Virus record (IMG/VR): IMGVR_UViG_3300042319_002138
Coordinates: 124,001 to 188,000 of that record
Strand: one strand, 5' to 3'
DNA: 64,000 nucleotides
Shown: positions 23,906-56,271 of the stretch, piece by piece
Position numbering within the stretch: the stretch's first letter is position 1
How the letters are laid out: every line of letters starts with the position of its first letter
Translations under genes and position numbers: made by a program
Notes under the pieces: model-generated
Told to the model about the DNA's origin: nothing
Seen by the model: only the letters and a program-made list of their open reading frames with translations
Databases searched by the model: none

Positions 23906-23926
23906 TATAAATAAAAAATGTTTTAA

Positions 23927-25122: not shown

Positions 25123-26088
25123 ATGGTTGAAAACTCACTCATTTACGGTATAATTTTGGATGTCTTAGGGAAACCTAAAAAGACAAATGTTTCTAAACAA
25201 CAATATAGTTTTGATTGTCCTGTTTGTTCTGCCGAAAAAGGTGAATATGAAGGTGATGGTAAAGGTAATTTAGAGGTTAACTTATCTGAGGGTGTTTATA
25301 ATTGTTGGGCTTGTGGTGAGGTTAATGGAACCAAGGGTAGTCTTAAAAAATTATTCAGAAGTTTTGCTAACAAACAACAAGTTAAAAAACTAAAAATGAT
25401 TGGTTACACTTTAGATGATTTTAAATCTAAAGTAAAAGATGCCAACGTTATCGAAGACTTAACCTTACCAAAAGGATTTATTAGTTTTGAAGAAGGTAAC
25501 CCTAAATCACTGTTATATAAACAAGCTTGGAATTATCTTACTAAAGAAAGAAAAATTAAAAAAGAAATAATCCAAAGATATAAAATGGGTTATGTTAGTG
25601 GGGGACAGTACGACTCTAGGGTTGTAATTCCTTCTTATGATATTAATAATGAATTAAATTATTGGGTAACAAGAACTTATGTTAATGCAAAACCAAAGTA
25701 CTTAAATCCTGATTCGGATAAAGAAATTTTAATATTTAACGAATGTTGTGTAGATTGGGATTCAGATGTTTATTTGGTTGAAGGACCTTTTGACCATATT
25801 GTAGTTCATAACTCAATCCCACTATTGGGTAAAAAAATTTCTGATAAACTAATGCATTCTTTATTCCATAAAACAAACGGTAATGTAATAATTCTCTTAG
25901 ATGATGATGCATGGGAAGACGCTAAAAAACATTATGCAAAGTTGAATGTTGGAAAATTATTTGGTAGAATTAGAATTGTTAAAATGAAAGAAGGTTATGA
26001 TATAGCCAAAATTCATGAAGACTTTGGTAGAGAAGGTGTGATTGAATGTATGAAAAGTGGTATTATTCTTAAAGAAAGTGAATTGTGA
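25123..26088 (+). CDS. DNA primase (zinc finger + TOPRIM)
   Basis: CPVC...CWAC zinc-binding domain, KYLN, VEGPFD and LLDDDA TOPRIM motifs. Confidence 0.9.
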   Translation: MVENSLIYGIILDVLGKPKKTNVSKQQYSFDCPVCSAEKGEYEGDGKGNLEVNLSEGVYNCWACGEVNGTKGSLKKLFRSFANKQQVKKLKMIGYTLDDFKSKVKDANVIEDLTLPKGFISFEEGNPKSLLYKQAWNYLTKERKIKKEIIQRYKMGYVSGGQYDSRVVIPSYDINNELNYWVTRTYVNAKPKYLNPDSDKEILIFNECCVDWDSDVYLVEGPFDHIVVHNSIPLLGKKISDKLMHSLFHKTNGNVIILLDDDAWEDAKKHYAKLNVGKLFGRIRIVKMKEGYDIAKIHEDFGREGVIECMKSGIILKESEL

Positions 26089-26297
26089 TGGGATTTAATA
26101 AAAGAATTATTAAGAAAGAAATTTTATTAGAAAGATTTAGACTTGAGGGTTATCAAGGAATTATAAATTATATAGGTAATGCTGATGCATTACTTGGTTT
26201 AACTGATGAAATAAGGGAGATATTGGATATCACTTACTGTGATAATTGCCCAACTAAAAAGAATGTTGAGATTAATAAAGTAATAAATGGCAAATAA
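26088..26297 (+). CDS. hypothetical protein
   Basis: About 69 aa, overlaps both neighbours in coupled fashion. Confidence 0.5.
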   Translation: MGFNKRIIKKEILLERFRLEGYQGIINYIGNADALLGLTDEIREILDITYCDNCPTKKNVEINKVINGK

Positions 26298-27036
26298 ATG
26301 GGAAACACAAGTTTGGTTAGAACCGATAGAACATAAATATTATCATAAGGAAACTAACGAAGTTTTTAAATCAGTAACAACAATTTTATCATTATTGGAA
26401 CCTCATTTCGATAGTGACTCAGTGGCTTACGCAATATCCCAACAGTCGGATGATGTAAAAAAACCTGAGTATGTTGGTATGACCAAGGGTGAGATATTAG
26501 TAGAATGGGAACGTATTAATCGTGAGGCAAATGAATATGGTACTGAAGTCCATGAAATATTGGAGAGGTACCTATTGGCTGATAGGATATACATACCTAA
26601 AAACGATTATGAAAGAGAGGTAATAAGTAAATTCCAAGAAGTAGATGATATGTCTGGTACAGTTTACCCAGAAGCAGTTTTATTTAGTGAAAAATATAAA
26701 ATTTGTGGAACAGCGGATATTGTAGAGGATTGTGGTGATTATTTTAATATATTGGACTTTAAAACAAATAAAGAACTAAATTACATATCAAAATACAATC
26801 AATGGTTAAATAAACCAGTATCACATTTATCAGATTGTCAATACAACGTATACGCTCTACAACTATCTATATATGCATACATGATACAAATGCAAACAAG
26901 AAAAAAAGTTGGTAAACTACAGATATTTTATTTAAACCCACAAAAAGATTATACCTTTGAAAAAATTAATATGCCCTATTTGGGTAGGGATGCCAAAGCA
27001 ATTTTGGACTATTGGTTAGAAAAAAATAAAAAATAA
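26287..27036 (+). CDS. PD-(D/E)XK exonuclease (RecB/Cas4-like phage exonuclease)
   Basis: SVTTIL, GTEVHEILE, E.....ICGTADIV, ILDFKT and LQLSIYA motifs. Confidence 0.85.
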   Translation: MANKWETQVWLEPIEHKYYHKETNEVFKSVTTILSLLEPHFDSDSVAYAISQQSDDVKKPEYVGMTKGEILVEWERINREANEYGTEVHEILERYLLADRIYIPKNDYEREVISKFQEVDDMSGTVYPEAVLFSEKYKICGTADIVEDCGDYFNILDFKTNKELNYISKYNQWLNKPVSHLSDCQYNVYALQLSIYAYMIQMQTRKKVGKLQIFYLNPQKDYTFEKINMPYLGRDAKAILDYWLEKNKK

Positions 27037-27088
27037 AGTCTTTAGTGTTTAATATTTTTTGTCTATTATTTATTAAATAAACAGATAT

Positions 27089-28240
27089 ATGAGTGATAAA
27101 ATAGAATTCGAACCTAAATTAACTTTAGAGGAGACAATTGGAATAAAAGATAGATTTATAAATTTTTACCGAGACCTTGAGTCAATCCAAGACTATTTTT
27201 TGGCTAGAAAAAAAGAAAAAATTGTGGATATTAACCACGATAAATACACTAAAAACATGTTTGATGATTATAGTGTTGAGCCAAAAAACATGGAATTTGA
27301 AATCGAGGTGATTGAGGGTAATTTATTTAATCCTTCTACACAGATTATCACTTCACTACCTTTAGAATCACAAATCGGTAGACAAATCATGATGGGTATT
27401 AGAGAAAAAACCACTAACAAATATGTTGGGTTTATTCGTGTGGCTTCACCTGTTTTATCTATTAAACCTAGAAATGATTTCTTTGGTGAAACAATTAGAG
27501 CTACAGCTGTTAATAGACATATGATTAATGGGGCCATTATTGTTCCTGTACAACCTTTTGGGTATAACTACTTAGGTGGTAAACTATTAGCTTTAATTTC
27601 ATGTTCACACGAAATTAAAAATATGTTAAAAGAAAAGTATGGTGATAAAATCGATACTTGTTTTTTTGAAACAACCTCCCTTTATGGTGACATCAAAGGT
27701 ATGAGTCAATACGATGGTTTAAAACCATATATCCGTTACCAAGACATGACAGAATCAGATTTGTTTTTATTCCCAACAGAAGAAGTTTATGGGCCGATTA
27801 GAGCTAAAATGAGAGAGTTATACGGTAACCCTGAATGGGGTGGAAATACTGTAGACCCTGTACCATCAGGACCAAAGATGAGAGAGTTTAATAAGGCAAT
27901 ATCAGTCCTTAAAAATCACCTTAAACATTATGATATCGATGCTTATAATGAGTTTCATTCTTTCACCAAAACACATATGAAAGCCAAAACCAAAAAGAGA
28001 TATTATTATTCAAACTTTGGATACGACAATGTTATTGAACATGTTAATTCTGGTGGTGAAATTCCTTTAATTGAAGGACAAAATTTCCATAAACACAAAC
28101 TTTCTCATATGATTGAGTGGTGGAAAGGGAAAGCACAAAAAAGATACGAGAAACTTGTTGAGGAAAATAAACTAAGACACGAAATGGAAATCTACACTCT
28201 TGAAAGAATAGAGAATAACGATATAGACATGGTGAGATAA
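27089..28240 (+). CDS. DUF4338-like / GNAT-fold protein, possible DNA-modifying enzyme
   Basis: GFIRVASP..SIKPR, IVPVQPFGYNYLGGKLLAL and ETTSLYG...SQYDG motifs, as recalled for DUF4338-related phage proteins. Confidence 0.55.
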   Translation: MSDKIEFEPKLTLEETIGIKDRFINFYRDLESIQDYFLARKKEKIVDINHDKYTKNMFDDYSVEPKNMEFEIEVIEGNLFNPSTQIITSLPLESQIGRQIMMGIREKTTNKYVGFIRVASPVLSIKPRNDFFGETIRATAVNRHMINGAIIVPVQPFGYNYLGGKLLALISCSHEIKNMLKEKYGDKIDTCFFETTSLYGDIKGMSQYDGLKPYIRYQDMTESDLFLFPTEEVYGPIRAKMRELYGNPEWGGNTVDPVPSGPKMREFNKAISVLKNHLKHYDIDAYNEFHSFTKTHMKAKTKKRYYYSNFGYDNVIEHVNSGGEIPLIEGQNFHKHKLSHMIEWWKGKAQKRYEKLVEENKLRHEMEIYTLERIENNDIDMVR

Positions 28241-28657
28241 ATGTACGTCGAAGTAAGTGGTAGACAAACAGGTAAATCAACTAGGATGGTTGAGGACATA
28301 GTTCTTTTTTTAGAAGAAAATGGTGGAAAAACAGCTTTAGTGGTTTCACCAACAGGGGCTAGTAGAAAACTAATAAAAGAAAAGATATTTCAAAAATGTG
28401 GTTACTGTATAAACAGAGTAATTACATCACATAAGATGTTACCACCCATGAATACCATGAAACAATATGTAGATGAGTTTTTTTATGTAAAAGAAAAAGA
28501 TTTATTTATTGACGGAAGTGCTTATTATGCTGGTACACCTAAATTAGAAGGTTTCACTGGAAAATACCAAGATATAATAGACCTATTTAACCAAAAAATG
28601 GGTAAAATGGTACAATTAAAACCAATAAAAAAACATGGATTTGGAGGAAGTGATTGA
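28241..28657 (+). CDS. miniature terminase large-subunit ATPase-like protein with C-terminal tag
   Basis: GRQTGKST (terminase-type Walker A), LVVSPT, YVDEFF (Walker B) and GTP (motif III) in only 138 aa. No nuclease domain. Ends LKPIKKHGF. Confidence 0.7.
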   Translation: MYVEVSGRQTGKSTRMVEDIVLFLEENGGKTALVVSPTGASRKLIKEKIFQKCGYCINRVITSHKMLPPMNTMKQYVDEFFYVKEKDLFIDGSAYYAGTPKLEGFTGKYQDIIDLFNQKMGKMVQLKPIKKHGFGGSD

Positions 28658-29036
28658 AAAGTGGGGTAACTTAGGTTTTTTAGATGGGTTAACCGAAGAG
28701 TTTAAAGGTAATACAGCTATAACCTATGAAAAGGCTGCCACTATATTAATTAGTGATGGTCCTTTATTTGGTAGTGGTGATTTTTTAATAACTACTATAT
28801 TCCCTATAATATATAGAATTTGTAAAACAGGTTTAATTATTAAAAATGTCCCAAATTTAATACAAAAATTTGACCAGTTTATAACTGATAATAGAGAGGT
28901 TATTAGTGATTTACATGGAACAAATTTTGATGCTGAGGCTGAGTTATGTAGTTTTTTTGCTGAAGACTATTGTGAATGGATTAAAGACAATCCTGAAATG
29001 GACCCAATAAAATATATACCAAAACATAAATTATAA
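28635..29036 (+). CDS. major-capsid-protein (gp23) fragment-derived small protein with C-terminal tag
   Basis: EKWGNLGFLDGL...TTIFPIIYRI (gp23 N-terminus-like) and DLHGTNFDAEAELC (gp23 HGxDAxAEL-like). Ends PIKYIPKHKL. Confidence 0.7.
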   Translation: MDLEEVIEKWGNLGFLDGLTEEFKGNTAITYEKAATILISDGPLFGSGDFLITTIFPIIYRICKTGLIIKNVPNLIQKFDQFITDNREVISDLHGTNFDAEAELCSFFAEDYCEWIKDNPEMDPIKYIPKHKL

Positions 29037-29329
29037 TGAATTTATCATACACCACATTCAAAAATTGGTTTTTAGATAATTACGGACATTTAGGATTTGA
29101 TTTATCACCACTTTACCAAGACACACAAGATTTAAAATTTTATTTTGGTGTTTTATATAATAACAATAAAACACAGATGGTTAGGATAAGTTTGGAAAGA
29201 GTTTTAGATTTTACTGTTGGTGATAAGGAACTTAGAAAATTAATATTTGACACATTATTAACAACTTATGGTTATAGATTAGATGGTGATTTTATACCAA
29301 TAAAAAAAATTAAACAATTTGAATTGTAA
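29036..29329 (+). CDS. small tagged protein, paralog of 29329..29658
   Basis: WFLDNYGHLGFDLSP vs WFENEFGHLGFTVTP. Ends PIKKIKQFEL. Confidence 0.65.
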   Translation: MNLSYTTFKNWFLDNYGHLGFDLSPLYQDTQDLKFYFGVLYNNNKTQMVRISLERVLDFTVGDKELRKLIFDTLLTTYGYRLDGDFIPIKKIKQFEL

Positions 29330-29658
29330 TGGATGAAATTTCACAATGGTTTGAAAATGAGTTTGGTCATTTGGGGTTCACGGTTACACCTATAATGTAT
29401 AACCCAGATAACTTTTCTCCCGTTAGGGGAGTTTTATTTAGGCATCCACGAGTAAGTAGTAATTATACTTTTAAAACTAATATACAAATTTCAGTTCAAC
29501 TCACAGATGACGTATATCATTCTAATTTTAATGTTGAAACTGAATATAAAGAATTACTTACAGAGGCAGTAATTCAATTTTTAAATATACACGGATTATC
29601 AATAGAGGATTTAAAAGACTTTAAACCTATAAAAAAAATTAATAAATTTAAATTATGA
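29329..29658 (+). CDS. small tagged protein with gp23 C-terminal-like segment
   Basis: TPIMYNPDNFSPVRGVLFRH resembles gp23 DPxNFQPxxGxxTRY. Ends PIKKINKFKL. Confidence 0.65.
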   Translation: MDEISQWFENEFGHLGFTVTPIMYNPDNFSPVRGVLFRHPRVSSNYTFKTNIQISVQLTDDVYHSNFNVETEYKELLTEAVIQFLNIHGLSIEDLKDFKPIKKINKFKL

Positions 29659-30464
29659 TAAAAATAATCTATCACTGTGCTGATTTACACATCAGACTTT
29701 ATAAAAGACACGATGAATACCGTGAACAATTTCAAAAGTTCTTTGATTCAGTTAAAGAACATATGGAAGAAAACAACCTTAACAGAGAAGAGGTTAGGAT
29801 TGTTATTGCTGGTGATGTGGTACACTCTAAGAATCAGTTAACACCTGAACTAGTAGATTTAACAACATGGTTCTTTAAAAATTGTTGTGACATTTGTGAT
29901 ACCATAGTTATTTTGGGTAACCACGATTTCTTAGCCAATAACTTAGATAGAATGGATGCGTTAACACCCATTATTGATACAATGAATGATGATAGACTTA
30001 AGTTTTTAAAACACACAGGATGTTTTGAGGATGAGAATATTGTTTGGTGTTTATATGGTCATATCGAAGGTTCACAGAGACCTGAAATAGAAAAGGCCAA
30101 AGAGGACTTTGGTGATAAGACATACGTTGGTTTATATCATGACCCTTTAATTGGTTTAAAGACAAATGTTGGGTTTGAATTTGAGGACGGACAAGACATT
30201 TCTATTTTTGATGGTTGTGATTTTGTTTGTTGTGGTGATATTCACTTATACCAAGTGATGAATTATCATGGAACTACTATCGTACAACCCTCATCAATGA
30301 TACAACAAGATTTTGGTGAGTCTGTAGATAAACACGGGTTTGTTATATGGAATGTAGAAACTAAAAAACATAAACATATTAACTTAGAATCCGATTATGG
30401 GTTTTATACTTTTAAAATAAGCTCAATAGAGGATATTGAAAATGAAATAGAAAGGTTAGTATGA
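29655..30464 (+). CDS. SbcD/Mre11-like (T4 gp47-like) metallophosphoesterase nuclease
   Basis: ADLH, GDVVH, GNHD and GDIH motifs. Confidence 0.9.
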   Translation: MIKIIYHCADLHIRLYKRHDEYREQFQKFFDSVKEHMEENNLNREEVRIVIAGDVVHSKNQLTPELVDLTTWFFKNCCDICDTIVILGNHDFLANNLDRMDALTPIIDTMNDDRLKFLKHTGCFEDENIVWCLYGHIEGSQRPEIEKAKEDFGDKTYVGLYHDPLIGLKTNVGFEFEDGQDISIFDGCDFVCCGDIHLYQVMNYHGTTIVQPSSMIQQDFGESVDKHGFVIWNVETKKHKHINLESDYGFYTFKISSIEDIENEIERLV

Positions 30465-30775
30465 TAAAACCTAAAAAATATATAAAAAAATACCATTTTG
30501 GTGATTTTGATTATGAAAAGGAGTTAAATAGACTTTTAAATGAATTATCTGGACAGATTCAAAGTAGTAATAGAGGGGGACCTGCCAATTGGATTGTTTG
30601 TTCACCACAAGTAGCTGATTCAATAAACTCAATGATTATGGAATCCCAAATAGGTGATTGGAGGATAGAAGATAACAGTTTTATACAAGATATACAATTA
30701 AGACCTAGAAGAGTACCTCAGTATCTTAACTTGGATATTAGTATCACTAACACAGATAATAATTATTTTTTATAA
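30461..30775 (+). CDS. chimeric capsid-fragment/tail-sheath-fragment protein with N-terminal tag
   Basis: N-terminal PKKYIKKYHF. RGGPANWIVCSPQVA resembles gp23 RGxGNFIIAS. DIQLRPRRVPQYLNLDISIT resembles the gp18 sheath C-terminus. Confidence 0.65.
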   Translation: MIKPKKYIKKYHFGDFDYEKELNRLLNELSGQIQSSNRGGPANWIVCSPQVADSINSMIMESQIGDWRIEDNSFIQDIQLRPRRVPQYLNLDISITNTDNNYFL

Positions 30776-30780
30776 ATAAA

Positions 30781-31095
30781 ATGGCAAATTTTTCAGGATT
30801 AACAACACAAAGAGAAGAAATTATTAAAAAGTGGATGGACTCTGGGTTGTTAGATTGTTTAGACACTAATAATGAAACAAAAATAAATATAGCCTCATTA
30901 CTTGAGGGTCAGACATCACAGTTAATTAATGAAGTGGATGAAGTACCTAGCACTGGTGGTTTTGATACTATAGTGTTCCCAATAGTAAGAAGGATTTATC
31001 CTAGAACATTATTTCAAGACTTACAGTCACATTACGTGGAATTTAAAAAAGATGGTTTAACACCATATAATTACGTTAAAAAACATAAATTATGA
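30781..31095 (+). CDS. gp23 N-terminal fragment protein with C-terminal tag
   Basis: KKWMDSGLLDCL..NIASLLEGQ..LINE..FDTIVFPIVRRIYP. Ends PYNYVKKHKL. Confidence 0.75.
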   Translation: MANFSGLTTQREEIIKKWMDSGLLDCLDTNNETKINIASLLEGQTSQLINEVDEVPSTGGFDTIVFPIVRRIYPRTLFQDLQSHYVEFKKDGLTPYNYVKKHKL

Positions 31096-31313
31096 CAATA
31101 GGGGATAAAGTAAAATATGAGAATTCTTTTTCAGATACTATGATAGGTACTATAGTTAGTAAAGAACAACCTACTTGTAAATGTAAAGGAATGGGTAAAT
31201 GGGTTATTGACTTTAGTGGTGAAATTAAAAAAATAAAAATAAGTGATGAAAGATTAAGTCTATATAATATAGAACCAACTATGACTAATTTAAATTTTAA
31301 TTTTGGAAAATAA
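31092..31313 (+). CDS. small hypothetical protein (SH3/KOW-like start), possible degenerate tag
   Basis: Starts IGDKVKY. Ends PTMTNLNFNFGK, with the same P...F-x-F spacing as the tag. Confidence 0.5.
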   Translation: MTIGDKVKYENSFSDTMIGTIVSKEQPTCKCKGMGKWVIDFSGEIKKIKISDERLSLYNIEPTMTNLNFNFGK

Positions 31314-31704
31314 TAAAAAATATCCTGATAATATTGTCTTTAATGAAAAGACAGATAAATTTGATGCTAACCTAAAGCATTACCCAACAACGGTGGGTGC
31401 TCAAAAGTTTGAAATTTTACAGATAGATAAATCAGATGCAATAAAGGCTGATAAATATTTTAATAAAAAATTAGAAGAATTAAAGGAAGAGTATGATAAG
31501 TTGCTGAATGAGTATGAGTCAACCAAGTTATTATACAACACCAAATATTCATTTCAACCTATATTAGGTGAGATTTATTATATCTATAAGAATAATAATG
31601 ATGAAAACTTTTTAAGTATCATAAAACCTAATGAATGGAATAAACCATGTTATGGTAGTTATAAACTAAATACTAATGGAACATGGGAAGAGATAGAGTA
31701 TTAA
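31303..31704 (+). CDS. DUF2452-like protein
   Basis: YSFQPILGEIYYIYK..FLSIIKPNEW..GSYKL..GTW resembles DUF2452 of Bacteroidota and their phages. TTG start. Confidence 0.6.
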   Translation: MENNKKYPDNIVFNEKTDKFDANLKHYPTTVGAQKFEILQIDKSDAIKADKYFNKKLEELKEEYDKLLNEYESTKLLYNTKYSFQPILGEIYYIYKNNNDENFLSIIKPNEWNKPCYGSYKLNTNGTWEEIEY

Positions 31705-31711
31705 TAATAAT

Positions 31712-32302
31712 ATGAATAGAAATTTAACCCTACAAGAAAAAATAGTAAAATTAACCACAAATAGTTTTCATAACATAGATAATAACATAAGACAAGGTGA
31801 ACAAATTACTCGTGAAAACTATGAAACTTTAAGAGAACAAATAATTGGTCTTTTGGAATATCTTGAAAATGAAAAGGTATATGTTTTAGATTTACCAGGT
31901 AATATAATACCACACCCTGAAGCTAGAAGAAGGATGGTAGACCCTGAGTTAGCTAACACACCAACAACAAAAACTTTAGTAGTTGGTACTCAAAATTTTA
32001 ATACTTTTTATGATTTAGTTATAAAAATAATGGAAGATTTAAGTAGTAATAAAGAAGTTTTTATATACACAATAGACACCGTTAGGATATTCAACCCGAT
32101 AAATTTTGAACCTGATTATAGATACATAGTTAGATATAGTACTATCGATATGGATTATTGGTATAACCCACAATACGTAGAACAAATAAATAACCCTATA
32201 CAACCTGAACAATATTTTGAAAGGTATTCAAATACAAGAACAGATGAAAAATCTAATAAACCAAAATCTATTGGTGATAGTAAATTGATACACAAATTTT
32301 AA
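31712..32302 (+). CDS. hypothetical protein with gp23 C-terminal-like segment and degenerate tag
   Basis: IFNPINFEPDYRYIVRY resembles DPxNFxP...RY. Ends KLIHKF. Confidence 0.55.
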   Translation: MNRNLTLQEKIVKLTTNSFHNIDNNIRQGEQITRENYETLREQIIGLLEYLENEKVYVLDLPGNIIPHPEARRRMVDPELANTPTTKTLVVGTQNFNTFYDLVIKIMEDLSSNKEVFIYTIDTVRIFNPINFEPDYRYIVRYSTIDMDYWYNPQYVEQINNPIQPEQYFERYSNTRTDEKSNKPKSIGDSKLIHKF

Positions 32303-32892
32303 TGGAACTACCTAAAGATTTAAAAGATGAAATATGGGAATACTGTAGATTAAACGATATAACCGATTTGAATGCTTTTATGGTTAGGATGTTAAAACAA
32401 GGTTACAATATTGAAAAATATGGTGCCACCCCTTTTAAAATGGGGCAAAAAGAACCTGAAATTATTGAAAAAGAAATCATCAGGGAAGTGATTGTAGAAA
32501 AAGAGGTGATTAAAGAGGTTATTGTCGAAAAAGAGAAGATTGTTGAGGTAATTAAAGAAGTCCCTGTTGAGGTTATAAAAGAAATAATCGTAGAAAAAAT
32601 TGGTGGTATTACTGAAAATAGAGTGGAAGTACCTGTTGAAGTAATAAAAGAAGTTATTAAAGAGGTTATAGTAGAAAAAATTGTTGAGGTGCCAATTAAA
32701 AACGATAAACAATTTAAAGAATTAGAACAACAAGTTGAAAACCTTAAAATAGAGTTAGAGTTGGAAAAAAATAGAAACTATAAACCAACTAAAACAGAAA
32801 AACCAAAAGAAGAAAATTCAAAAACACCAACTAGCAACGTTATTAGTTGGATATCCAAATCTGAAAGGGATACTGATTTATATGGAGAGTAA
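32302..32892 (+). CDS. protein with EVIKEV/EVPVEV low-complexity repeats
   Basis: Central (E-V/I-I/P-K/V-E-K/V)n repeat followed by a coiled-coil. Confidence 0.7.
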   Translation: MELPKDLKDEIWEYCRLNDITDLNAFMVRMLKQGYNIEKYGATPFKMGQKEPEIIEKEIIREVIVEKEVIKEVIVEKEKIVEVIKEVPVEVIKEIIVEKIGGITENRVEVPVEVIKEVIKEVIVEKIVEVPIKNDKQFKELEQQVENLKIELELEKNRNYKPTKTEKPKEENSKTPTSNVISWISKSERDTDLYGE

Positions 32893-32946: not shown

Positions 32947-35325
32947 ATGGAAAACTTGGTAAAAGAAGTTAAAACTGTTGTGCCTGAAAAGGCTAAAATC
33001 AGAGTTATATGGGATGATAGTCCAGAAAATTACACCCAGGAACGTGCAAAAAGAATTGCTAAATACTTTACTGAGAAATATAACAACCCTAATGTACAGG
33101 TTATTTTTAAACCTAAAAAAGTACTCACTGAAAATGGTGAAGTAGAAATGACCGTTGCTGATAATGTAATGGATACTAATTATCAAAGAAAGTTATTTAA
33201 ACAATGGATTACTGATAATAAAGTAGATGTTGATTGGGATAGACTCTTACGTTTAGATGATAAAGTAAACGAAAAATTATCACAAGAAAGAGAAACAGAT
33301 TATAGATATCGTAATTGGTATATAAAGGAGTTAGAGTGGTCTAATTTCCTTTCTTATGGTGATGGTAATAAAATCTCTTTTAAAGAGTTAGAGGGTATTA
33401 CAGTGATTACTTCAGACCCGTTAAATATGGGTGGTAAAACAACTCTTGCTTTAGATTTACTTTTATTCCTTTTCTTTAATACCACCACAAAAGGTAGTAC
33501 CGCAATTAAAATGTTTAATCTTTTTAGAGAAGATAAAAATGAAGTAGTTGTTAAGGGTAAAGTTGCTATTGATGGTGTAGATTATATCATCGAGAGAACT
33601 GTTGTACGTAAAGCTAAAAGGACTGGTGATGAGTATACCACTAGAACAGACTTATCTTTCTATAGAACCTTACCTGATGGTAGTATTGAAAACTTAGAAG
33701 GTGAACAAAGAAGAGAAACAGAAGAATTTATAAAAAAATCGGTTGGTTCAGTGAATGATTTTTTATTAACAATTATTGCTGATGCCGACAATCTTGAGGA
33801 CATCATTCACACCAAACCGACTGAAAAAGGGCGAATCCTATCTAGATTTATTGGATTAGAAGTTATTGAAGACAAAGAAACTATTGTCAAAGAAATGAAA
33901 TCTAATTGGTCAAAAGGATTAAAATCAGACCAATACAATATTACAGACTTAAATTCTGAGATTGGTGAACTAAAAAGTTTAATTTCTGAAAATGAAAACT
34001 CGATTAAAGAAAATGAATTAGAAATTAAATCCCTAGAACTTAATATTGAGTCTTCCACAGTCAAAAAAGAAAATTTAATTGGTAAAAAAATAGAGATAGA
34101 TTCTGATGTTATTAATTTAAGACCCGAAGATATTGATAATGAAATTGATAGAATCGAATTGTACGGTAAGAAGAAAAAGAGTGAGTATGAGGATACTAAA
34201 AAATCTTTTGATTCTATGACAGAACCAGTTTATGATGAAGATTTACATGAGGAATATGTAAAACAAGAACGAGGATTTAGTTTAGAAGTAGAGAGAGCTA
34301 AATCTAAAATAAAGGAAACTCAAAAAACAATTAAAAATTTAGAAGAGGGTGAGTTCTGTTCTTTATGTAAACAACCTTTAGCTGATGTAGACCATTCAGA
34401 TGAAATTGAGGAAAATAAAGTATTATTAGATACTTTGGGTAGTGATTTATTGTCTTTATCCGAAAAATTAGTTGAGATTACAAATCTAGTTAAAGAACAA
34501 GATAACATTAAATCTTCTGTTTGGGAATACGATAGAACTTCTTTAACGGTTTCTAAACTAGAATTGGATTTAGAAAAATTAAGATTAGAAAGAAAAGAAA
34601 AATTAGACCTTAAAAAACGTTATGAAGATAATCTAGACAATATCCAAAAAAATAAAGATTTGGAGAGTCAGATAATAGGTTATAATTCTAAAATAAGTGG
34701 ATTAGAATTGGAAAAAACTAATAAAATTAAATTAGGTGAAAGATTATCTAATGAAATTGAAACTTATAAAACAAAGATAAATAAGAACGAGGAATACATT
34801 AAAACTATTAAAGCAGAAGAAGAAATTAAAATAATTTTTGATGTTTATGCTAGAATGGTTGGTAAAAATGGTATCCTTAAAATAATAATGAGAAGTGTTA
34901 TGCCTTTAATTAACTCAGAATTGGATAGATTACTAGTAGATACGGCATCATTTAAATTAGAAGTGGATATTAACGATAAGAAAGAAGTTGAATTTTTAAT
35001 AGTAAAAGAAAACGAAAAAGGTGAGGCTATCAAATACCCTATTAATGAAGGTAGTGGATTTGAAAAAACAGTGTCATCATTAGCTTTACGTTGTGTAATG
35101 TCAAAAGTCAGTTGTCTACCAAAACCTAACATAATTGTTTTTGATGAGGTTTTTGGAAAGGTTGCTAACACTAATTTAGAGTTAGTTGGAAACTTCTTTC
35201 AGAAATGTTCAGAAATGTTCCCTAACATTTTTATTATAACACATAATGAAATTGTTAAAGATTGGGCGACTAAAATAATAACAATTAAAAAGAAAAATAA
35301 CATATCATCATTAATGGTACAATAA
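32947..35325 (+). CDS. SbcC/Rad50-like (T4 gp46-like) ABC ATPase with N-terminal extension
   Basis: NFLSYG, NMGGKTT (Walker A), CSLC zinc hook in the coiled coil, GSGFEK signature, IVFDEVFG (Walker B) and IITH. Confidence 0.92.
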   Translation: MENLVKEVKTVVPEKAKIRVIWDDSPENYTQERAKRIAKYFTEKYNNPNVQVIFKPKKVLTENGEVEMTVADNVMDTNYQRKLFKQWITDNKVDVDWDRLLRLDDKVNEKLSQERETDYRYRNWYIKELEWSNFLSYGDGNKISFKELEGITVITSDPLNMGGKTTLALDLLLFLFFNTTTKGSTAIKMFNLFREDKNEVVVKGKVAIDGVDYIIERTVVRKAKRTGDEYTTRTDLSFYRTLPDGSIENLEGEQRRETEEFIKKSVGSVNDFLLTIIADADNLEDIIHTKPTEKGRILSRFIGLEVIEDKETIVKEMKSNWSKGLKSDQYNITDLNSEIGELKSLISENENSIKENELEIKSLELNIESSTVKKENLIGKKIEIDSDVINLRPEDIDNEIDRIELYGKKKKSEYEDTKKSFDSMTEPVYDEDLHEEYVKQERGFSLEVERAKSKIKETQKTIKNLEEGEFCSLCKQPLADVDHSDEIEENKVLLDTLGSDLLSLSEKLVEITNLVKEQDNIKSSVWEYDRTSLTVSKLELDLEKLRLERKEKLDLKKRYEDNLDNIQKNKDLESQIIGYNSKISGLELEKTNKIKLGERLSNEIETYKTKINKNEEYIKTIKAEEEIKIIFDVYARMVGKNGILKIIMRSVMPLINSELDRLLVDTASFKLEVDINDKKEVEFLIVKENEKGEAIKYPINEGSGFEKTVSSLALRCVMSKVSCLPKPNIIVFDEVFGKVANTNLELVGNFFQKCSEMFPNIFIITHNEIVKDWATKIITIKKKNNISSLMVQ

Positions 35326-36496: not shown

Positions 36497-37312
36497 ATGG
36501 TATCATACAAACGTTACATTGACACAACAGAGGACTCTATTTCTAACTATTTAAAAGAGGTTAGAAAGATTGATTTGGTAACACCCGAAGAAGAGTTGGA
36601 GTTAGCTAAAAAAATTGCTGAGGGGGACAAAAGGGCATTAGATAAATTGGTTAAAGCTAATCTTAGATTTGTTATCTCAATAGCTAAAGAATATCAAGGA
36701 CAAGGGATTCCTTTGGTAGATTTGATTTCTGAAGGTAACTACGGATTGATAAAAGCTGCAGGTAAATTTGACCATACAAGAGGTTTTAGGTTTATTTCTT
36801 ATGCTGTTTGGTGGGTTAAGCAATCGATTCTACAATCTTTGTGTGAAAATTCAAGAACAGTAAGACTTCCTGTTAATATCACAAACCAGTTATCAAAAAT
36901 TAAAAAAGAGATTGCTGTCTTCGAACAAGAAAATCAAAGAATGCCAATCAACGGTGAGATGGATTTATCTGTACTAAATCACCCTACATGTACTTCATTG
37001 AATGATAAAATAAATGAAGAAGGTGATGAGATTATGGACTTAATTCCTGATTTAACATTTGCTAGACCTGACGAGGACACTATGTCTGATGAAATCTTAA
37101 AAAACGAATTGGAAAAAACTTTATCAATTTTAAGTGATAGAGAAAGAAAAATTGTTGACATGTATTTTGGTGTTGATGGTGGTGCTTTAACTCTTGAACA
37201 AATTGGTGATGAGTTTGGTCTTACAAAAGAACGTATTCGTCAGATTAAAGAAAAGGCTTTAAGAAAGTTGAAGAATAATAGTGAAAATCTTTTTGAATTT
37301 GTACAAAAGTAA
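36497..37312 (+). CDS. RNA polymerase sigma-70 factor (RpoD/SigA-like, no region 1.1)
   Basis: YLKEV, ANLRFVISIAKEY, DLISEGNYGLIKAA, FISYAVWW, RTVRLP and LTLEQIG..GLTKERIRQI. Confidence 0.95.
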   Translation: MVSYKRYIDTTEDSISNYLKEVRKIDLVTPEEELELAKKIAEGDKRALDKLVKANLRFVISIAKEYQGQGIPLVDLISEGNYGLIKAAGKFDHTRGFRFISYAVWWVKQSILQSLCENSRTVRLPVNITNQLSKIKKEIAVFEQENQRMPINGEMDLSVLNHPTCTSLNDKINEEGDEIMDLIPDLTFARPDEDTMSDEILKNELEKTLSILSDRERKIVDMYFGVDGGALTLEQIGDEFGLTKERIRQIKEKALRKLKNNSENLFEFVQK

Positions 37313-38037
37313 TGAAAATAGTTGTTTTTACAGGGGCAGGAGTTTCTAAGGAATCAGGTATTGATACATTCAGAGATGCTGGTGGTACATGGGAAAATGA
37401 AGATGTTGAAGCTGTTGCCACACCTGAAGGTTGGAGAAAAGACAGAGAAAGAGTATTGGATTTTTACAACAAAAGAAGGCAACAGTTACTTGGTGTCGAA
37501 CCCAATGAGGCACATAAACTTATTGCTGAATTAGAAAAAGAACATGAGGTAACCGTTATCACACAAAATGTAGATAATTTACATGAACGTGGGGGTTCTA
37601 CAAACATCTTACATTTACATGGTGAGTTAACTAAAGCACAGAGTAGTTTAAACCATAAGAAAGTTATTGATGTTGGTTATAAACCAACTAATATTGGTGA
37701 CAAACATGAAGACGGTTCACAATTAAGACCACACATTGTTTGGTTTAATGAGTACCCCAATAATATAAATGAATCTGTAATAGCTCTTAGAAATTGTGAT
37801 GTTTTATTAGTTATTGGCACCACATTATTTATAAGTTATACACTTGGTCTATTGAGGTCTTGTAAAGATTTACATAACCCTAATATGGGGGTGATAGACG
37901 TTGTTTGCATCGACCCCAACCCTCCTAAAGGTGAACTAGATGGTATGTTTAGAGATGTTAATTATATTGAAAAACCTGCCACTGAGGGTATGAAAGAATT
38001 TATTGAAAATTATTTGCCTAAATTTATTGCTAATTAA
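37312..38037 (+). CDS. cobB: NAD-dependent deacylase, sirtuin (CobB-like)
   Basis: FTGAGVSKESGIDTFRD, ITQNVDNLHE, LHGEL, RPHIVWF and IGT. Confidence 0.9.
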   Translation: MKIVVFTGAGVSKESGIDTFRDAGGTWENEDVEAVATPEGWRKDRERVLDFYNKRRQQLLGVEPNEAHKLIAELEKEHEVTVITQNVDNLHERGGSTNILHLHGELTKAQSSLNHKKVIDVGYKPTNIGDKHEDGSQLRPHIVWFNEYPNNINESVIALRNCDVLLVIGTTLFISYTLGLLRSCKDLHNPNMGVIDVVCIDPNPPKGELDGMFRDVNYIEKPATEGMKEFIENYLPKFIAN

Positions 38038-53651: not shown

Positions 53652-54584
53652 ATGAAAGAATATTATGATATTTTAGGTTTAAATGAAGGAGCTAAAGAAG
53701 AAGATATAAAAAAGGCATATAGAAAAATGTCTAAAAAATATCACCCAGATTTAAACCCAAACAACAAAGAGGCTGAAGAAAACTTTAAAAAGGTTGTTGA
53801 AGCTTACGAAATATTAACAGGGAAACAAAAACCAAAAAACCAAGGAAATCCTTTTGGTGGTTTTAACCCTTTCCAAGGAGGTCCACAAAAAGCTAGACCT
53901 TTAAAATTAGTTATAGAATTAACCCTTGAGGAATCTTATTATGGTTGTGATAAGATTATTAATTTCCATTCTACCGAAGCTTGTGACAAATGTCATGGGG
54001 AAGGAGGTTTTGAACCACAACAGTGTAACCAATGTGGTGGGAATGGTCATATACAACAAGGCCCATTTTTATTTATGTGTAATAATTGTGGTGGTAACGG
54101 TAAATTATTTAAATCTGTTTGTTATCACTGTAATGGTAATGGTGCTGTTAAAACGATTAGAAGTGTTGAGGTTAAAGTACCTAGTGGAACAGTTGATGAT
54201 TCTTTCTTTACCTACCCTGGTTTAGGTGATTGGGTTAAGAATGCCCAAAGGGGGGATTTGTATTTTATTACCAAGTTAAAACCACATGATGTTTATACTT
54301 TAGAAGGTTTAAATCTTAAAAGAAAATTAGACATTCCAATCCTAGACATTTTATTAGGTATTGAAAGTGAGTTTAGTACTTTAGATGGTAGTGTTAAAGT
54401 AAAGATACCTAAGTTATCTGAGACAAATAAAACGTTTAGATTACGTGGTAAGGGTTTTGTGGATGGTTCTACTGGTATAACCGGTGATTTATACGTTACA
54501 TTAAACCCAATAATACCAAAAGAATTATCTGATATTGAAGAATATAAGATAAGGGAGTTAAAAAATATGCCCAACTTTAGTTAA
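53652..54584 (+). CDS. dnaJ: DnaJ chaperone (J domain, CxxCxGxG zinc repeats, C-domain)
   Basis: YYDILG, HPD, four CxxCxGxG repeats and GDLYV. Confidence 0.95.
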   Translation: MKEYYDILGLNEGAKEEDIKKAYRKMSKKYHPDLNPNNKEAEENFKKVVEAYEILTGKQKPKNQGNPFGGFNPFQGGPQKARPLKLVIELTLEESYYGCDKIINFHSTEACDKCHGEGGFEPQQCNQCGGNGHIQQGPFLFMCNNCGGNGKLFKSVCYHCNGNGAVKTIRSVEVKVPSGTVDDSFFTYPGLGDWVKNAQRGDLYFITKLKPHDVYTLEGLNLKRKLDIPILDILLGIESEFSTLDGSVKVKIPKLSETNKTFRLRGKGFVDGSTGITGDLYVTLNPIIPKELSDIEEYKIRELKNMPNFS

Positions 54585-55857: not shown

Positions 55858-56271
55858 ATGATTAAAGAAGGAAGTAAAGTAAAAGTACATTACACAGGTA
55901 AATTTGAAGATAATAATGTTTTCGATTCATCTACAGGTAAAGACCCAATCGAATTCGTTGTTGGTGAGGGTAATTTGATTCTTGGTTTTGAACAAGGTGT
56001 TATGGGGTTGTCGGCAGGTGATAAAAAAACTGTTGAATTAGAACCAGAGCAAGCTTATGGACCATATAACGAAGAACTAGTTAACCAAGTACCTCTTGAT
56101 AGAGTACCTGAAGGAGTACAAGCAGGTCAAATGTTGGAAGCACAAACAGAAGCGGGGCCAATTCCTGTTGTTGTTACTGATGTAAACGAAGAAACTGTTA
56201 CCATCGATGCTAATCACCCATTGGCTGGTAGAAAATTGATTTTTGAATTGGAAATTGTTGAAGTAGCGTAA
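55858..56271 (+). CDS. slyD: FKBP-type peptidyl-prolyl isomerase (SlyD-like)
   Basis: VKVHYTG..D..VFDSS, G.LI.GFE, AYG and DANHPLAG..LIFE. Confidence 0.9.
   Translation: MIKEGSKVKVHYTGKFEDNNVFDSSTGKDPIEFVVGEGNLILGFEQGVMGLSAGDKKTVELEPEQAYGPYNEELVNQVPLDRVPEGVQAGQMLEAQTEAGPIPVVVTDVNEETVTIDANHPLAGRKLIFELEIVEVA

What the first reader, a model, noticed from the sequence alone, without database searches (positions are those of the whole stretch)
28241..28657. Stand-alone 138-aa terminase-ATPase mimic lacking the nuclease domain
The ORF retains terminase-type Walker A (GRQTGKST), a motif-Ia-like LVVSPT, Walker B (YVDEFF) and the coupling motif (GTP) in compressed form, then the shared tag. It is too short to package DNA. 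The retained surface is the ATPase region that Avs-type sensors are reported to recognise. A decoy role is inference.
Basis: partly seen in the sequence, partly recalled or inferred. Interest (0 to 1): 0.8.

Follow-up and report, generated by a model that had tools for sequence, protein, structure and literature searches.

The report
Stand-alone terminase-like phage mini-ATPase
This freshwater T4-like phage carries a small, well-conserved ATPase whose core resembles the motor half of the DNA-packaging enzyme. It looks like a working enzyme rather than a decoy, and the only tested look-alike (T4 vs.8) sets off a bacterial terminase sensor rather than blocking it.

Summary
It belongs to a family of small stand-alone phage P-loop proteins (93-241 aa). 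R8, G11, K12, R15, D78, E79, F80, Y95 and Y96 are kept in at least 90% of 136 diverged members. A confident AlphaFold model (pLDDT 89) is a minimal ASCE ATPase core. Its best solved matches include terminase ATPase domains (P74-26, PhiV-1, T4 gp17), level with SF1 helicase domain 1A. Profile comparison links the family to T4 vs.8 (97%) and to T4-type terminase ATPase (86%), with Walker A, Walker B and the TTP motif in the same order.

vs.8 was described in 2026 as a stand-alone terminase-like ATPase that activates EcAvs2, and isolated terminase ATPase domains also activate it. So "terminase-like ATPase without nuclease" is supported, but "decoy" is not.

The gene keeps one position, between a DruA-like gene and Mre11/Rad50, in phages down to 31% identity. 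That points to a core role as an active enzyme in DNA metabolism.

The C-terminal basic tag is a real motif selected at the protein level, and its partner is unknown. The GFGGSD tail is read-through into the next gene's overlapping frame.

The parts
28241..28657 (+). 138-aa stand-alone terminase-like ASCE P-loop NTPase
   Evidence: ORF. Conserved family. AF2 model pLDDT 89, pTM 0.82. Fold matches.
28259..28282 (+). Walker A, GRQTGKST (residues 7-14). Its P-loop arginine R8 aligns with R162 of T4 gp17 SRQLGKT.
   Evidence: R8, G11 and K12 kept in at least 90% of 136 sequences. Aligned to gp17 161-168.
28337..28354 (+). Strand beta2 and turn, LVVSPT (residues 33-38). Aligns with gp17 GILAHK.
   Evidence: Model strand 31-35. 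hhalign with gp17 and vs.8.
28424..28438 (+). TSHKM (residues 62-66), invariant in the close family. Aligns with gp17 SSPDAVRG, so K65 may act as a finger or sensor residue (inference).
   Evidence: T62, S63, K65 and M66 invariant in A1. Alignment.
28466..28483 (+). Walker B with catalytic glutamate, YVDEFF (residues 76-81)
   Evidence: D78, E79 and F80 kept in at least 90%. Aligned to gp17 IYIDEC.
28520..28540 (+). Motif III (coupling motif), AYYAGTP (residues 94-100). Family consensus AYYxTTP aligns with gp17 IIITTTP.
   Evidence: Y95 and Y96 kept in at least 90%. Alignment.
28619..28642 (+). C-terminal basic tag KPIKKHGF (residues 127-134), in a disordered tail
   Evidence: pLDDT below 50 from residue 126. 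Tag in 53 of 136 members against 1.4 expected. Synonymous codon variation between orthologues.
28635..28657 (+). 23-nt overlap with the next gene. The FGGSD end of the GFGGSD tail (its first G, codon 28637-28639, starts with the G of that ATG) is the out-of-frame reading of the next gene's MDLEEVIE.
   Evidence: Compared with L003, L011 and L012, where the ORF stops at ..KHK[MF].
27089..28240 (+). Upstream neighbour: DruA-like (DUF4338) protein. Its stop is directly followed by the ATPase's ATG.
   Evidence: Pfam PF14236 5e-15. PADLOC DruA 6e-9. Conserved upstream neighbour, adjacent or 1-2 small ORFs away, in L003-L006, L011 and L012.
28635..29036 (+). Tag-bearing small ORF (ends ..IPKHKL), paralogue of 30781-31095
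29036..29329 (+). Tag-bearing small ORF (ends ..KKIKQFEL), paralogue of 29329-29658
29329..29658 (+). Tag-bearing small ORF (ends ..KKINKFKL)
29655..30464 (+). Mre11/gp47-like phosphoesterase, the conserved downstream anchor of the gene block
   Evidence: Pfam Metallophos 6e-9. Synteny.
30781..31095 (+). Tag-bearing small ORF (ends ..VKKHKL)
32947..35325 (+). Rad50/gp46-like ATPase, end of the conserved recombination block
   Evidence: SbcC_Walker_B hit, weak. Conserved 787-792-aa gene in all related loci.

Best explanation
The ORF encodes a working, stand-alone ASCE NTPase. It shares ancestry with the N-terminal ATPase subdomain of T4-type large terminases and is a distant relative of T4 vs.8. 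It keeps the nucleotide-hydrolysis parts: the P-loop lysine and arginine, the Walker B Asp-Glu, and the TTP coupling motif. It has lost, or never had, the adenine-reading N-terminal motif, the lid subdomain, the nuclease and the portal-binding parts, so it cannot package DNA. It is carried as a core gene of the replication/recombination block (primase, PD-(D/E)XK exonuclease, DruA-like, this gene, Mre11, Rad50).

Inferred mechanism: it binds and hydrolyses ATP as an oligomer or together with a partner protein. A disordered basic C-terminal motif, [IVL][KR][KR]H[KR][LMF], shared with several neighbouring small proteins, recruits it to a common hub. There it works as an ATP-driven accessory factor in phage DNA metabolism.

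Shown: the fold, the motif conservation, the homology links, the synteny and the reality of the tag. Inferred: catalysis, oligomerisation, the hub and the DNA-metabolism role.
For: - Catalytic residues are kept in at least 90% of 136 sequences whose mean column identity is 13%.
- The model is a complete minimal ASCE sheet, with a disordered tail from residue 126.
- Terminase ATPases rank at or near the top of the fold searches.
- hhalign gives vs.8 profile Prob 97.2, E 4.6e-11, and T4-type TerL N-domain Prob 86, E 4.9e-6. The vs.8-to-TerL score is the same strength, Prob 83.
- With single T4 gp17, the motifs align in order over residues 7-103 against 161-291.
- Seven members hit PHROG phrog_2, terminase large subunit, best E 1.2e-6.
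- The position between the DruA-like gene and Mre11 is kept in phages whose ATPase is only 31-47% identical.
- A clear member in Pseudomonas phage Cygsa01 sits just upstream of the sliding clamp and clamp loader.
- A 153-nt contig, 95% identical, covers 28291-28441 in a marine metatranscriptome. This is weak evidence.
Against: - No biochemical data exist for any member.
- The fold cannot be told apart from SF1 helicase domain 1A: Rep Z 11.1 equals gp17 Z 11.1.
- Pfam's best hits are AAA_19/UvrD.
- A thymidine kinase sequence scores as well as gp17 over the stretch from Walker A to Walker B.
- Other family members sit in unrelated contexts: the lysis cassette of P2-like Pseudomonas prophages and next to a Gad2-like gene. 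The DNA-metabolism role therefore rests on synteny in one lineage.
- Expression timing could not be established.
Confidence: 0.5

Rival explanations
1. Decoy or anti-defence protein. The mini-ATPase presents a terminase-like ATPase surface to host terminase sensors (Avs1-3, Upx) early in infection and occupies them without triggering them.
For: - The terminase-like fold includes a match to the Avs3-bound PhiV-1 terminase chain.
- AlphaFold 3 places the related vs.8 in the EcAvs2 pocket, and the authors raise the possibility that such proteins are anti-defence factors (PMC13601566).
- One family member lies next to a Gad2-like gene in an early region rich in small ORFs.
Against: - vs.8 co-expression is toxic with EcAvs2, so it activates the sensor.
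- Isolated terminase ATPase domains alone strongly activate EcAvs2. Ksap2, also terminase-ATPase-like, activates KpAvs2.
- A surface mimic has no need for near-invariant catalytic residues.
- The gene is a syntenic core gene, not a variable accessory one.
- It is only about 19% identical to T4 gp17 in the hhalign alignment.
Confidence: 0.1
2. Regulator of the packaging motor. As a terminase ATPase paralogue, it binds the large or small terminase or the portal, or joins mixed rings. This would time or limit packaging, or poison the motor of a competing phage.
For: Homology with the TerL ATPase subdomain, which carries the ring interfaces. Conserved basic residues R15, R42, R59 and K65 could serve as trans-acting fingers.
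Against: The gene lies in the replication/recombination block, far from any packaging gene in the window. Nothing shows an interaction. The regions of gp17 that contact portal and small terminase are absent.
Confidence: 0.15
3. Small nucleotide or nucleoside kinase-like enzyme related to type II thymidine kinase. It would supply or modify nucleotides for replication.
For: A3 against Bas60 thymidine kinase gives Prob 87, E 4e-6 from Walker A to Walker B. Three members hit the thymidine kinase PHROG. TK 2orw gives Z 8.9. One JGI record calls a member thymidine kinase.
Against: The zinc/lasso thymidine-binding domain that defines TK1-type kinases is absent. The TK alignment stops at Walker B, whereas gp17 also aligns through motif III. 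Structural scores are lower than for gp17 and Rep.
Confidence: 0.07
4. Helicase-derived fragment: a lone SF1 domain 1A that works with a separate partner. It would be unrelated to terminases except through the shared ASCE fold.
For: AAA_19 hits in 19 of 28 close members, best E 6.6e-6, and UvrD hits in 8. Rep and PcrA give Z 11.1 and 10.7. UvrD-like clusters reach TM 0.74-0.76. Weak GajB hit.
Against: - SF1 motif III and the whole 2A domain are absent, as far as motif reading and the model show.
- The family's RQxGK[ST], DEF and TTP motifs match terminases by my knowledge of both families. This was checked here only against gp17.
- Dda-like helicases from the same phage lineage score only E 3-5e-3.
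- Among PHROGs with an annotated function, the hits are terminase (phrog_2, phrog_7579), thymidine kinase, and one single-member hit to a virion structural protein. No helicase family appears.
Confidence: 0.1

Closest known systems
T4 vs.8 (Evans et al. 2026, Nat Commun, PMC13601566)
   Same: Both are small stand-alone ATPase-like proteins of T4-type phages, with Walker A GGRQ[ST]GK[ST] and Walker B IIDE. vs.8 is homologous to the T4 terminase ATPase domain and lacks a nuclease. Family profiles match at Prob 97.2, E 4.6e-11. Both are about equally distant from TerL. vs.8 is present in 1014 phage records, mostly enterobacterial T-even-type phages.
   Different: Only about 48 columns (Walker A to helix 2) align confidently. 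vs.8 has a 50-85-aa N-terminal extension and ends just after the last core strand. It lacks the AYYxTTP motif and the basic C-terminal tag, and sits in a different genome region (denV/ipII side). Its Avs2-activating property is untested for the window protein.
T4 gp17 large terminase, N-terminal ATPase subdomain I (PDB 2o0h, 3cpe)
   Same: ASCE core with P-loop arginine, Walker B Asp-Glu and TTP coupling motif, all in the same order. VIA Z 11.1, rmsd 3.2 over 134 residues, against chain residues 155-328.
   Different: About 19% identity in the hhalign alignment. No adenine-binding motif upstream of Walker A, no lid subdomain II, no nuclease domain. 138 aa against 610 aa.
Ksap2 (Bas60_220), activator of KpAvs2 (Bechon et al. 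2024, PMC11564622)
   Same: A small phage protein reported to have a weak terminase-ATPase-like fold. It shows that terminase sensors can bind such proteins.
   Different: No P-loop and no detectable sequence relation (hhalign Prob 0.3). It lies between the nrdA and nrdB genes.
SF1 helicase domain 1A (Rep, PcrA, UvrD; Pfam AAA_19)
   Same: Equally good structural superposition and weak Pfam hits.
   Different: No 1B, 2A or 2B domains and no SF1 motif III or IV. Single domain only.
Type II thymidine kinase
   Same: Similar size and an N-terminal P-loop with Walker B VDE.
   Different: No lasso/zinc domain. Similarity ends at Walker B.

Membership tests
Large terminase (TerL, T4 type, Terminase_6N + 6C) | Walker A with P-loop arginine, (S/G)RQxGK(S/T) | tested here: met
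   GRQTGKST at residues 7-14. R8, G11 and K12 kept in at least 90%. Aligned to gp17 161-168.
Large terminase (TerL, T4 type, Terminase_6N + 6C) | Walker B with catalytic Glu, followed by the TTP coupling motif | tested here: met
   VDEF at 77-80 and AYYxGTP at 94-100 align in order with gp17 IDEC and TTTP.
Large terminase (TerL, T4 type, Terminase_6N + 6C) | Significant match to the Terminase_6N family model | tested here: not met
   Only 3 of 28 members hit PF03237, best E 0.03, below the cut-off. hhalign to a TerL N-domain profile reaches Prob 86 only.
Large terminase (TerL, T4 type, Terminase_6N + 6C) | C-terminal RNase H-like nuclease domain and ATPase lid subdomain | tested here: not met
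   The protein ends at residue 138. The model has one domain plus a disordered tail. All but one of the 58 relatives are 93-241 aa; the exception is a 671-aa hit.
vs.8-like stand-alone terminase-like ATPases | Stand-alone small protein with Walker A and B, homologous to the TerL ATPase domain | tested here: met
vs.8-like stand-alone terminase-like ATPases | Sequence homology to vs.8 itself over the whole domain | tested here: inconclusive
   Profile match Prob 97.2, but over 48 core columns only. The rest aligns only when forced. Pairwise BLAST E 8e-4 over 43 aa.
vs.8-like stand-alone terminase-like ATPases | Activates EcAvs2 on co-expression | not testable with these tools
   Reported for vs.8 (PMC13601566). 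No co-folding or assay was available here.
SF1 helicase (UvrD/Rep/Dda) | Two RecA-like domains (1A + 2A) with motifs III-VI | tested here: not met
   Single domain of 138 aa. Dda-like helicases of the same lineage score E 3-5e-3 over the Walker A region only.
Type II thymidine kinase | C-terminal zinc/lasso nucleoside-binding domain | tested here: not met
   No such domain in the sequence or the model. The TK alignment ends at residue 87.
Anti-defence decoy of terminase sensors | Binds an Avs or Upx sensor and lowers its activation by the real terminase | not testable with these tools
The literature shows activation by related proteins, not inhibition.

The most novel reading that the evidence does not exclude
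The ATPase is one piece of an early-expressed cassette of tagged mini-proteins. The shared C-terminal [KR][KR]H[KR][LMF] motif would dock all of them, including a terminase-ATPase look-alike, onto one hub. That hub could be a host sensor, a protease or a phage scaffold. The cassette as a whole would blunt or divert host recognition of conserved phage proteins. This would be a new counter-defence strategy: tagged fragments of the phage's own core proteins.
Probability: 0.06. Interest if true: 0.85.

Novelty: new variant of a known kind. Interest (0 to 1): 0.45.

Why it matters
Stand-alone terminase-like ATPases were recognised only in 2026, through T4 vs.8, as unexplained proteins that terminase sensors can detect. 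This ORF shows that a separate and much more compact family of the same kind is widespread. It occurs in freshwater and marine T4-like phages, in a Pseudomonas phage, and in P2-like prophages. In one lineage it is a fixed part of the recombination block.

At 138 aa it may be close to the smallest natural terminase-like ATPase core. That makes it a convenient object for asking what such proteins do, and whether Avs2, Avs3 or Upx sense them. The shared C-terminal motif on otherwise unrelated early proteins points to an unidentified interaction hub in these phages.

Tried and rejected
- Sequence searches of Pfam, PHROGs, NCBIfam, PADLOC and PDB sequences gave no significant named family.
- The first AlphaFold run, with 28 close sequences, was poor (pLDDT 60). 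It was replaced by a run with 136 sequences.
- I tested Ksap2 as a relative and rejected it.
- I tested the idea that the tagged neighbours 28635-29036 and 30781-31095 are fragments of the major capsid protein N-terminus. hhalign gave Prob 1% against T4 gp23 residues 1-352 and BLAST was not significant. Only 30461-30775 keeps a weak Gp23 hit (E 0.0012, below cut-off).
- I asked whether the tag is just an A-rich translation-initiation signal for the next gene, and rejected that. Many tightly coupled genes lack it. The amino acids are kept while third codon positions vary (ATA/ATT, CAT/CAC, AAA/AAG). It is strongly enriched over shuffled sequences.
- Promoter and terminator scans were uninformative in this 30% GC sequence.
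- The T4 gp17 homologue search returned only close relatives (81-100% identical), so the TerL profile is shallow.
- No comparably deep profiles of helicases or thymidine kinases could be built, so the terminase-versus-helicase ranking is not settled.

Full report
**Observation**

The window is a 30% GC phage sequence. Its genes are almost all on the + strand. It holds large structural-looking genes up to about 23.9 kb. Then comes a replication/recombination block:
- a primase-like gene at 25123-26088;
- a PD-(D/E)XK exonuclease at 26287-27036;
- a DruA-like gene at 27089-28240;
- the target ORF at 28241-28657;
- small ORFs;
- an Mre11-like gene at 29655-30464;
- a Rad50-like gene at 32947-35325;
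- a sigma-70-type factor and a Sir2 gene.

No cultured phage is close at the DNA level. The DruA-like protein is 34-39% identical to a gene of T4-like cyanophages and of Pelagibacter phage HTVC008M. Near-identical DNA is found in many lake-water metagenomes, and relatives occur in marine samples.

The target ORF is exactly as described: 138 aa, with GRQTGKST at residues 7-14, LVVSPT at 33-38, YVDEFF at 76-81, GTP at 98-100 and KPIKKH at 127-132.

**It is a real, conserved gene**

A word-indexed search found 29 proteins of 120-149 aa at 46-98% identity. In their alignment M1-E4, R8, G11, K12, R15, K52-C53-G54, C56, R59, T62, S63, K65, M66, K74, Q75, V77-F80 and A94-Y96 are invariant.

An exhaustive phmmer scan of 1.84 billion representative proteins found 58 relatives. 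All are 93-241 aa except one of 671 aa. A profile search extended the family to 120 proteins, including roughly 158-aa proteins in Pseudomonas and Streptomyces genomes.

In the 136-sequence alignment A3 the mean column identity is 13%. Even so, R8, G11, K12, R15, D78, E79, F80, Y95 and Y96 are kept in at least 90% of sequences. That pattern is what selection on catalysis produces.

**Fold**

With the deep alignment, AlphaFold2 gives pLDDT 89 and pTM 0.82. Residues 1-123 are confident and residues 126-138 are disordered. The order of elements is strand, P-loop, helix, strand, helix, strand, strand (Walker B), strand (motif III), helix.

- Foldseek against the PDB ranks the P74-26 TerL ATPase domain first (four entries). 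Next come the Avs3-bound PhiV-1 terminase and T4 gp17, and then eIF4A, UvrB, Rho, F1 and Dda. All E-values are marginal, about 6e-3 and weaker, with TM about 0.55-0.59.
- BFVD gives a mix of terminases, RNA-virus SF1 helicases and PhoH.
- VIA-align over 48,161 chains gives Rep helicase Z 11.1 and T4 gp17 ATPase Z 11.1 (134 residues, rmsd 3.2, chain 155-328). PcrA scores 10.7 and Upf1 10.4.
- The ESM Atlas shape search returns T4-type Terminase_6N, gpA ATPase and UvrD-like clusters, all at TM 0.72-0.76.

So the fold is a minimal ASCE core of the helicase/terminase type. Terminase is among the best matches, but the fold alone does not separate it from helicases.

**Sequence-profile evidence**

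- Pfam: AAA_19 in 19 of 28 close members (best 6.6e-6), UvrD in 8, Terminase_6N in 3 (0.03).
- PHROGs: mostly unknown-function families (phrog_1488, 5437, 2586). The families with an annotated function that were hit are terminase large subunit (phrog_2, 7 members, best 1.2e-6; phrog_7579, 2 members), thymidine kinase (3 members) and a single-member virion structural protein hit.
- hhalign of A3 against T4 gp17 aligns residues 7-103 with gp17 161-291 in one colinear block. GRQTGKST pairs with SRQLGKTT, ITSHKM with ASSPDAVRG, YVDEF with YIDEC, and AYYxGTP with IIITTTP (E 6.9e-5).
- With a 15-sequence TerL N-domain profile the score is Prob 86, E 4.9e-6.
- Comparators as single sequences: Bas60 thymidine kinase E 4.3e-6, but only up to Walker B; T4 TK 1e-3; two Dda-like helicases of the same phage lineage 3-5e-3; PhoH 6e-3; P2-type TerL 4e-3.

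**The key comparison: T4 vs.8**

The weak tblastn hits of the window protein in Tevenvirinae fall on a gene annotated vs.8 in some records. It is present in 1014 phage records.

Evans et al. 2026 (PMC13601566) describe T4 vs.8 as an uncharacterised ATPase-like protein. It shares sequence homology and high structural similarity with the T4 terminase ATPase domain, with conserved Walker A and B motifs. PSI-BLAST from it retrieves T4-like terminases. [quoted passage not shown]

I built an 8-sequence vs.8 profile.
- Against A3 it scores Prob 97.2, E 4.6e-11, over 48 core columns from Walker A to helix 2.
- vs.8 against the TerL profile gives Prob 83, E 9.3e-6, the same strength as A3 against TerL.

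So the window's family, vs.8 and TerL form a consistent triangle. The family is nevertheless separate from vs.8. It has no N-terminal extension, it has the AYYxTTP motif and a different C-terminus, and it sits in a different genome region.

**Context**

In six related loci the ATPase is 31-71% identical. In all of them the order is the same: DruA-like gene, 0-2 small ORFs, the ATPase, small ORFs, Mre11, then Rad50, with a Dda-like helicase just after Mre11 in L011 and L012. The small ORFs around it come and go.

A clear member in Pseudomonas phage Cygsa01 (E 4e-20) lies directly upstream of the sliding clamp and clamp loader. Other members lie between the endolysin and LysC in P2-like Pseudomonas prophages and next to a Gad2-like gene in a 153-kb contig.

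In the window's lineage it behaves as a core gene of the DNA replication/recombination module, not as a variable accessory gene.

**The tag**

[KR][HF]x[LMFI] lies within 9 residues of the C-terminus in 53 of 136 family members, against 1.4 expected. This includes sub-families with quite different C-terminal domains (..IKRHRF..IKKHKF).

The same motif ends three other genes of the window (0.06 expected). It ends seven genes in L003 (0.03 expected), among them the PD-(D/E)XK exonuclease.

Orthologous tags keep the amino acids while third codon positions vary. The region is disordered in the model. So it is a short linear motif selected at the protein level. Its partner is unknown.

In the window's sub-lineage the stop after ..KH-K-[LM] has been lost. 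The ORF reads on for six codons in the alternative frame of the next gene's MDLEEVIE, giving GFGG(S/N)(D/N). The conservation of that tail is therefore explained by the overlapped gene.

**Interpretation**

The decoy half is not.
1. Near-invariance of the catalytic residues argues for enzymatic function.
2. The gene is a syntenic core gene.
3. It is only about 19% identical to T4 gp17 in the hhalign alignment, so it is no recent copy of a T4-type terminase.
4. The only experiments on comparable proteins show activation, not blockade. vs.8 is toxic with EcAvs2. Isolated terminase ATPase domains strongly activate EcAvs2. Ksap2 activates KpAvs2.

The authors themselves leave open that such proteins may be anti-defence factors that Avs2 learned to sense. 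A defence-related role therefore cannot be excluded, and I give it about 0.1.

My best explanation (0.5) is a working stand-alone NTPase of terminase ancestry. It would act as an accessory factor in phage DNA metabolism and be recruited through its C-terminal motif. The rivals are a packaging-motor regulator (0.15), a helicase-derived fragment (0.1) and a TK-like kinase (0.07).

**Limits**

- Nothing here measures activity, binding or expression.
- The one RNA-library contig (95% identical over 28291-28441) is weak evidence and could be DNA carry-over.
- The TerL and vs.8 profiles are shallow. No deep helicase or TK profiles were available, so the terminase-over-helicase ranking rests on motif colinearity and on the vs.8 link, not on a decisive score gap.
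- Host assignment (an AT-rich freshwater bacterium, possibly SAR11-like) is inference only.

Noticed in passing
window 29013-29036, 29306-29329, 29635-29658, 31072-31095, 32279-32302; L003 6323-6346, 10385-10408, 11940-11963, 12937-12960, 13170-13193, 13983-14006, 14315-14338: A basic C-terminal motif, consensus [IVL][KR][KR]H[KR][LMF] at or near the C-terminus, is shared by otherwise unrelated small early proteins and in L003 by the PD-(D/E)XK exonuclease. It is far above chance and selected at the protein level. Its binding partner or purpose is unknown (possibilities: a hub-docking motif or a degron).
   Followed up: partly
window 28635-28657: A 23-nt gene overlap. The ATPase lost its stop after the tag's ..KH and now ends in the alternative frame of the next gene's first codons. 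This explains the conserved GFGG(S/N)(D/N) tail in the close sub-family. L012 shows an analogous extension (..KRHKFNDDGEY).
   Followed up: yes
window 27089-28240: A phage-encoded DruA-like (DUF4338) protein, the family that defines Druantia defence systems. It is widespread in T4-like cyanophages and Pelagibacter phage HTVC008M as 'putative cytoplasmic protein'. One record annotates features under the match as 'methylcarbamoylase mom' and 'TIP60 protein'. Its role in phages is unknown.
   Followed up: partly
window 28635-29036 and 30781-31095; 29036-29329 and 29329-29658: Two pairs of paralogous small ORFs (BLASTP 1e-7 and 4e-10) with conserved N-terminal motifs (..KWGxLGFLDGL.. and ..WFxxxFGHLGF..). 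All carry the tag. By eye they resemble the T4 gp23 N-terminus, but profile comparison did not support this (Prob 1%).
   Followed up: partly
window 30461-30775: A 104-aa ORF with a weak hit to the major capsid protein family Gp23 (Pfam E 0.0012, below cut-off; PHROG major head protein 0.0099), centred on ..GGPANWIVCSPQVA... It is conserved in L003 and L005. It could be a capsid-protein-derived fragment or a chance match.
   Followed up: no
L007 8001-8477 and L008 8001-8477: Clear family members (EISPRQTGKTTRL.., ..FYDEFDW.., ..GAYYATTP) sit between the endolysin and LysC in P2-like Pseudomonas prophages. That is a lysis-cassette position quite unlike the replication-module position in T4-like phages.
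   Followed up: partly
L009 8001-9463: A 189-aa family member overlaps the start of a Gad2-like (anti-Gabija) gene, in a long run of small early ORFs that also includes a Sequestin-family gene. The window protein itself gives a weak PADLOC hit to the N-terminus of GajB (E 0.005).
   Followed up: no
window 36497-37312 and 37312-38037: A full sigma-70-type factor (regions 1.2, 2 and 4) instead of a T4 gp55-type late sigma, followed by a Sir2-family gene. The sigma factor ends in ..ENLFEFVQK, which by eye recalls the hydrophobic-acidic clamp-binding tails of T4 proteins.
   Followed up: no
window 53652-54584, 55858-56271, 56877-58319: By eye, a J-domain (DnaJ-like) protein and an FKBP-type isomerase-like protein. 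Next to them is a DUF2828/DUF7788 protein (Pfam 1e-45). Together they look like a possible chaperone-related cluster.
   Followed up: no
window 30771-30778 and 23906-23913: The T4 late-promoter-like octamer TATAAATA lies in the short gaps just upstream of the ORFs starting at 30781 and 23927. Overall the octamer is not enriched in the window (26 against 20 expected).
   Followed up: no
window 26500-32400 (runs X1, X25): Near-identical DNA occurs in many lake-water metagenomes, whereas related proteins come largely from marine samples. A marine metatranscriptome holds short contigs 80-95% identical to parts of this block, including the ATPase gene.
   Followed up: partly
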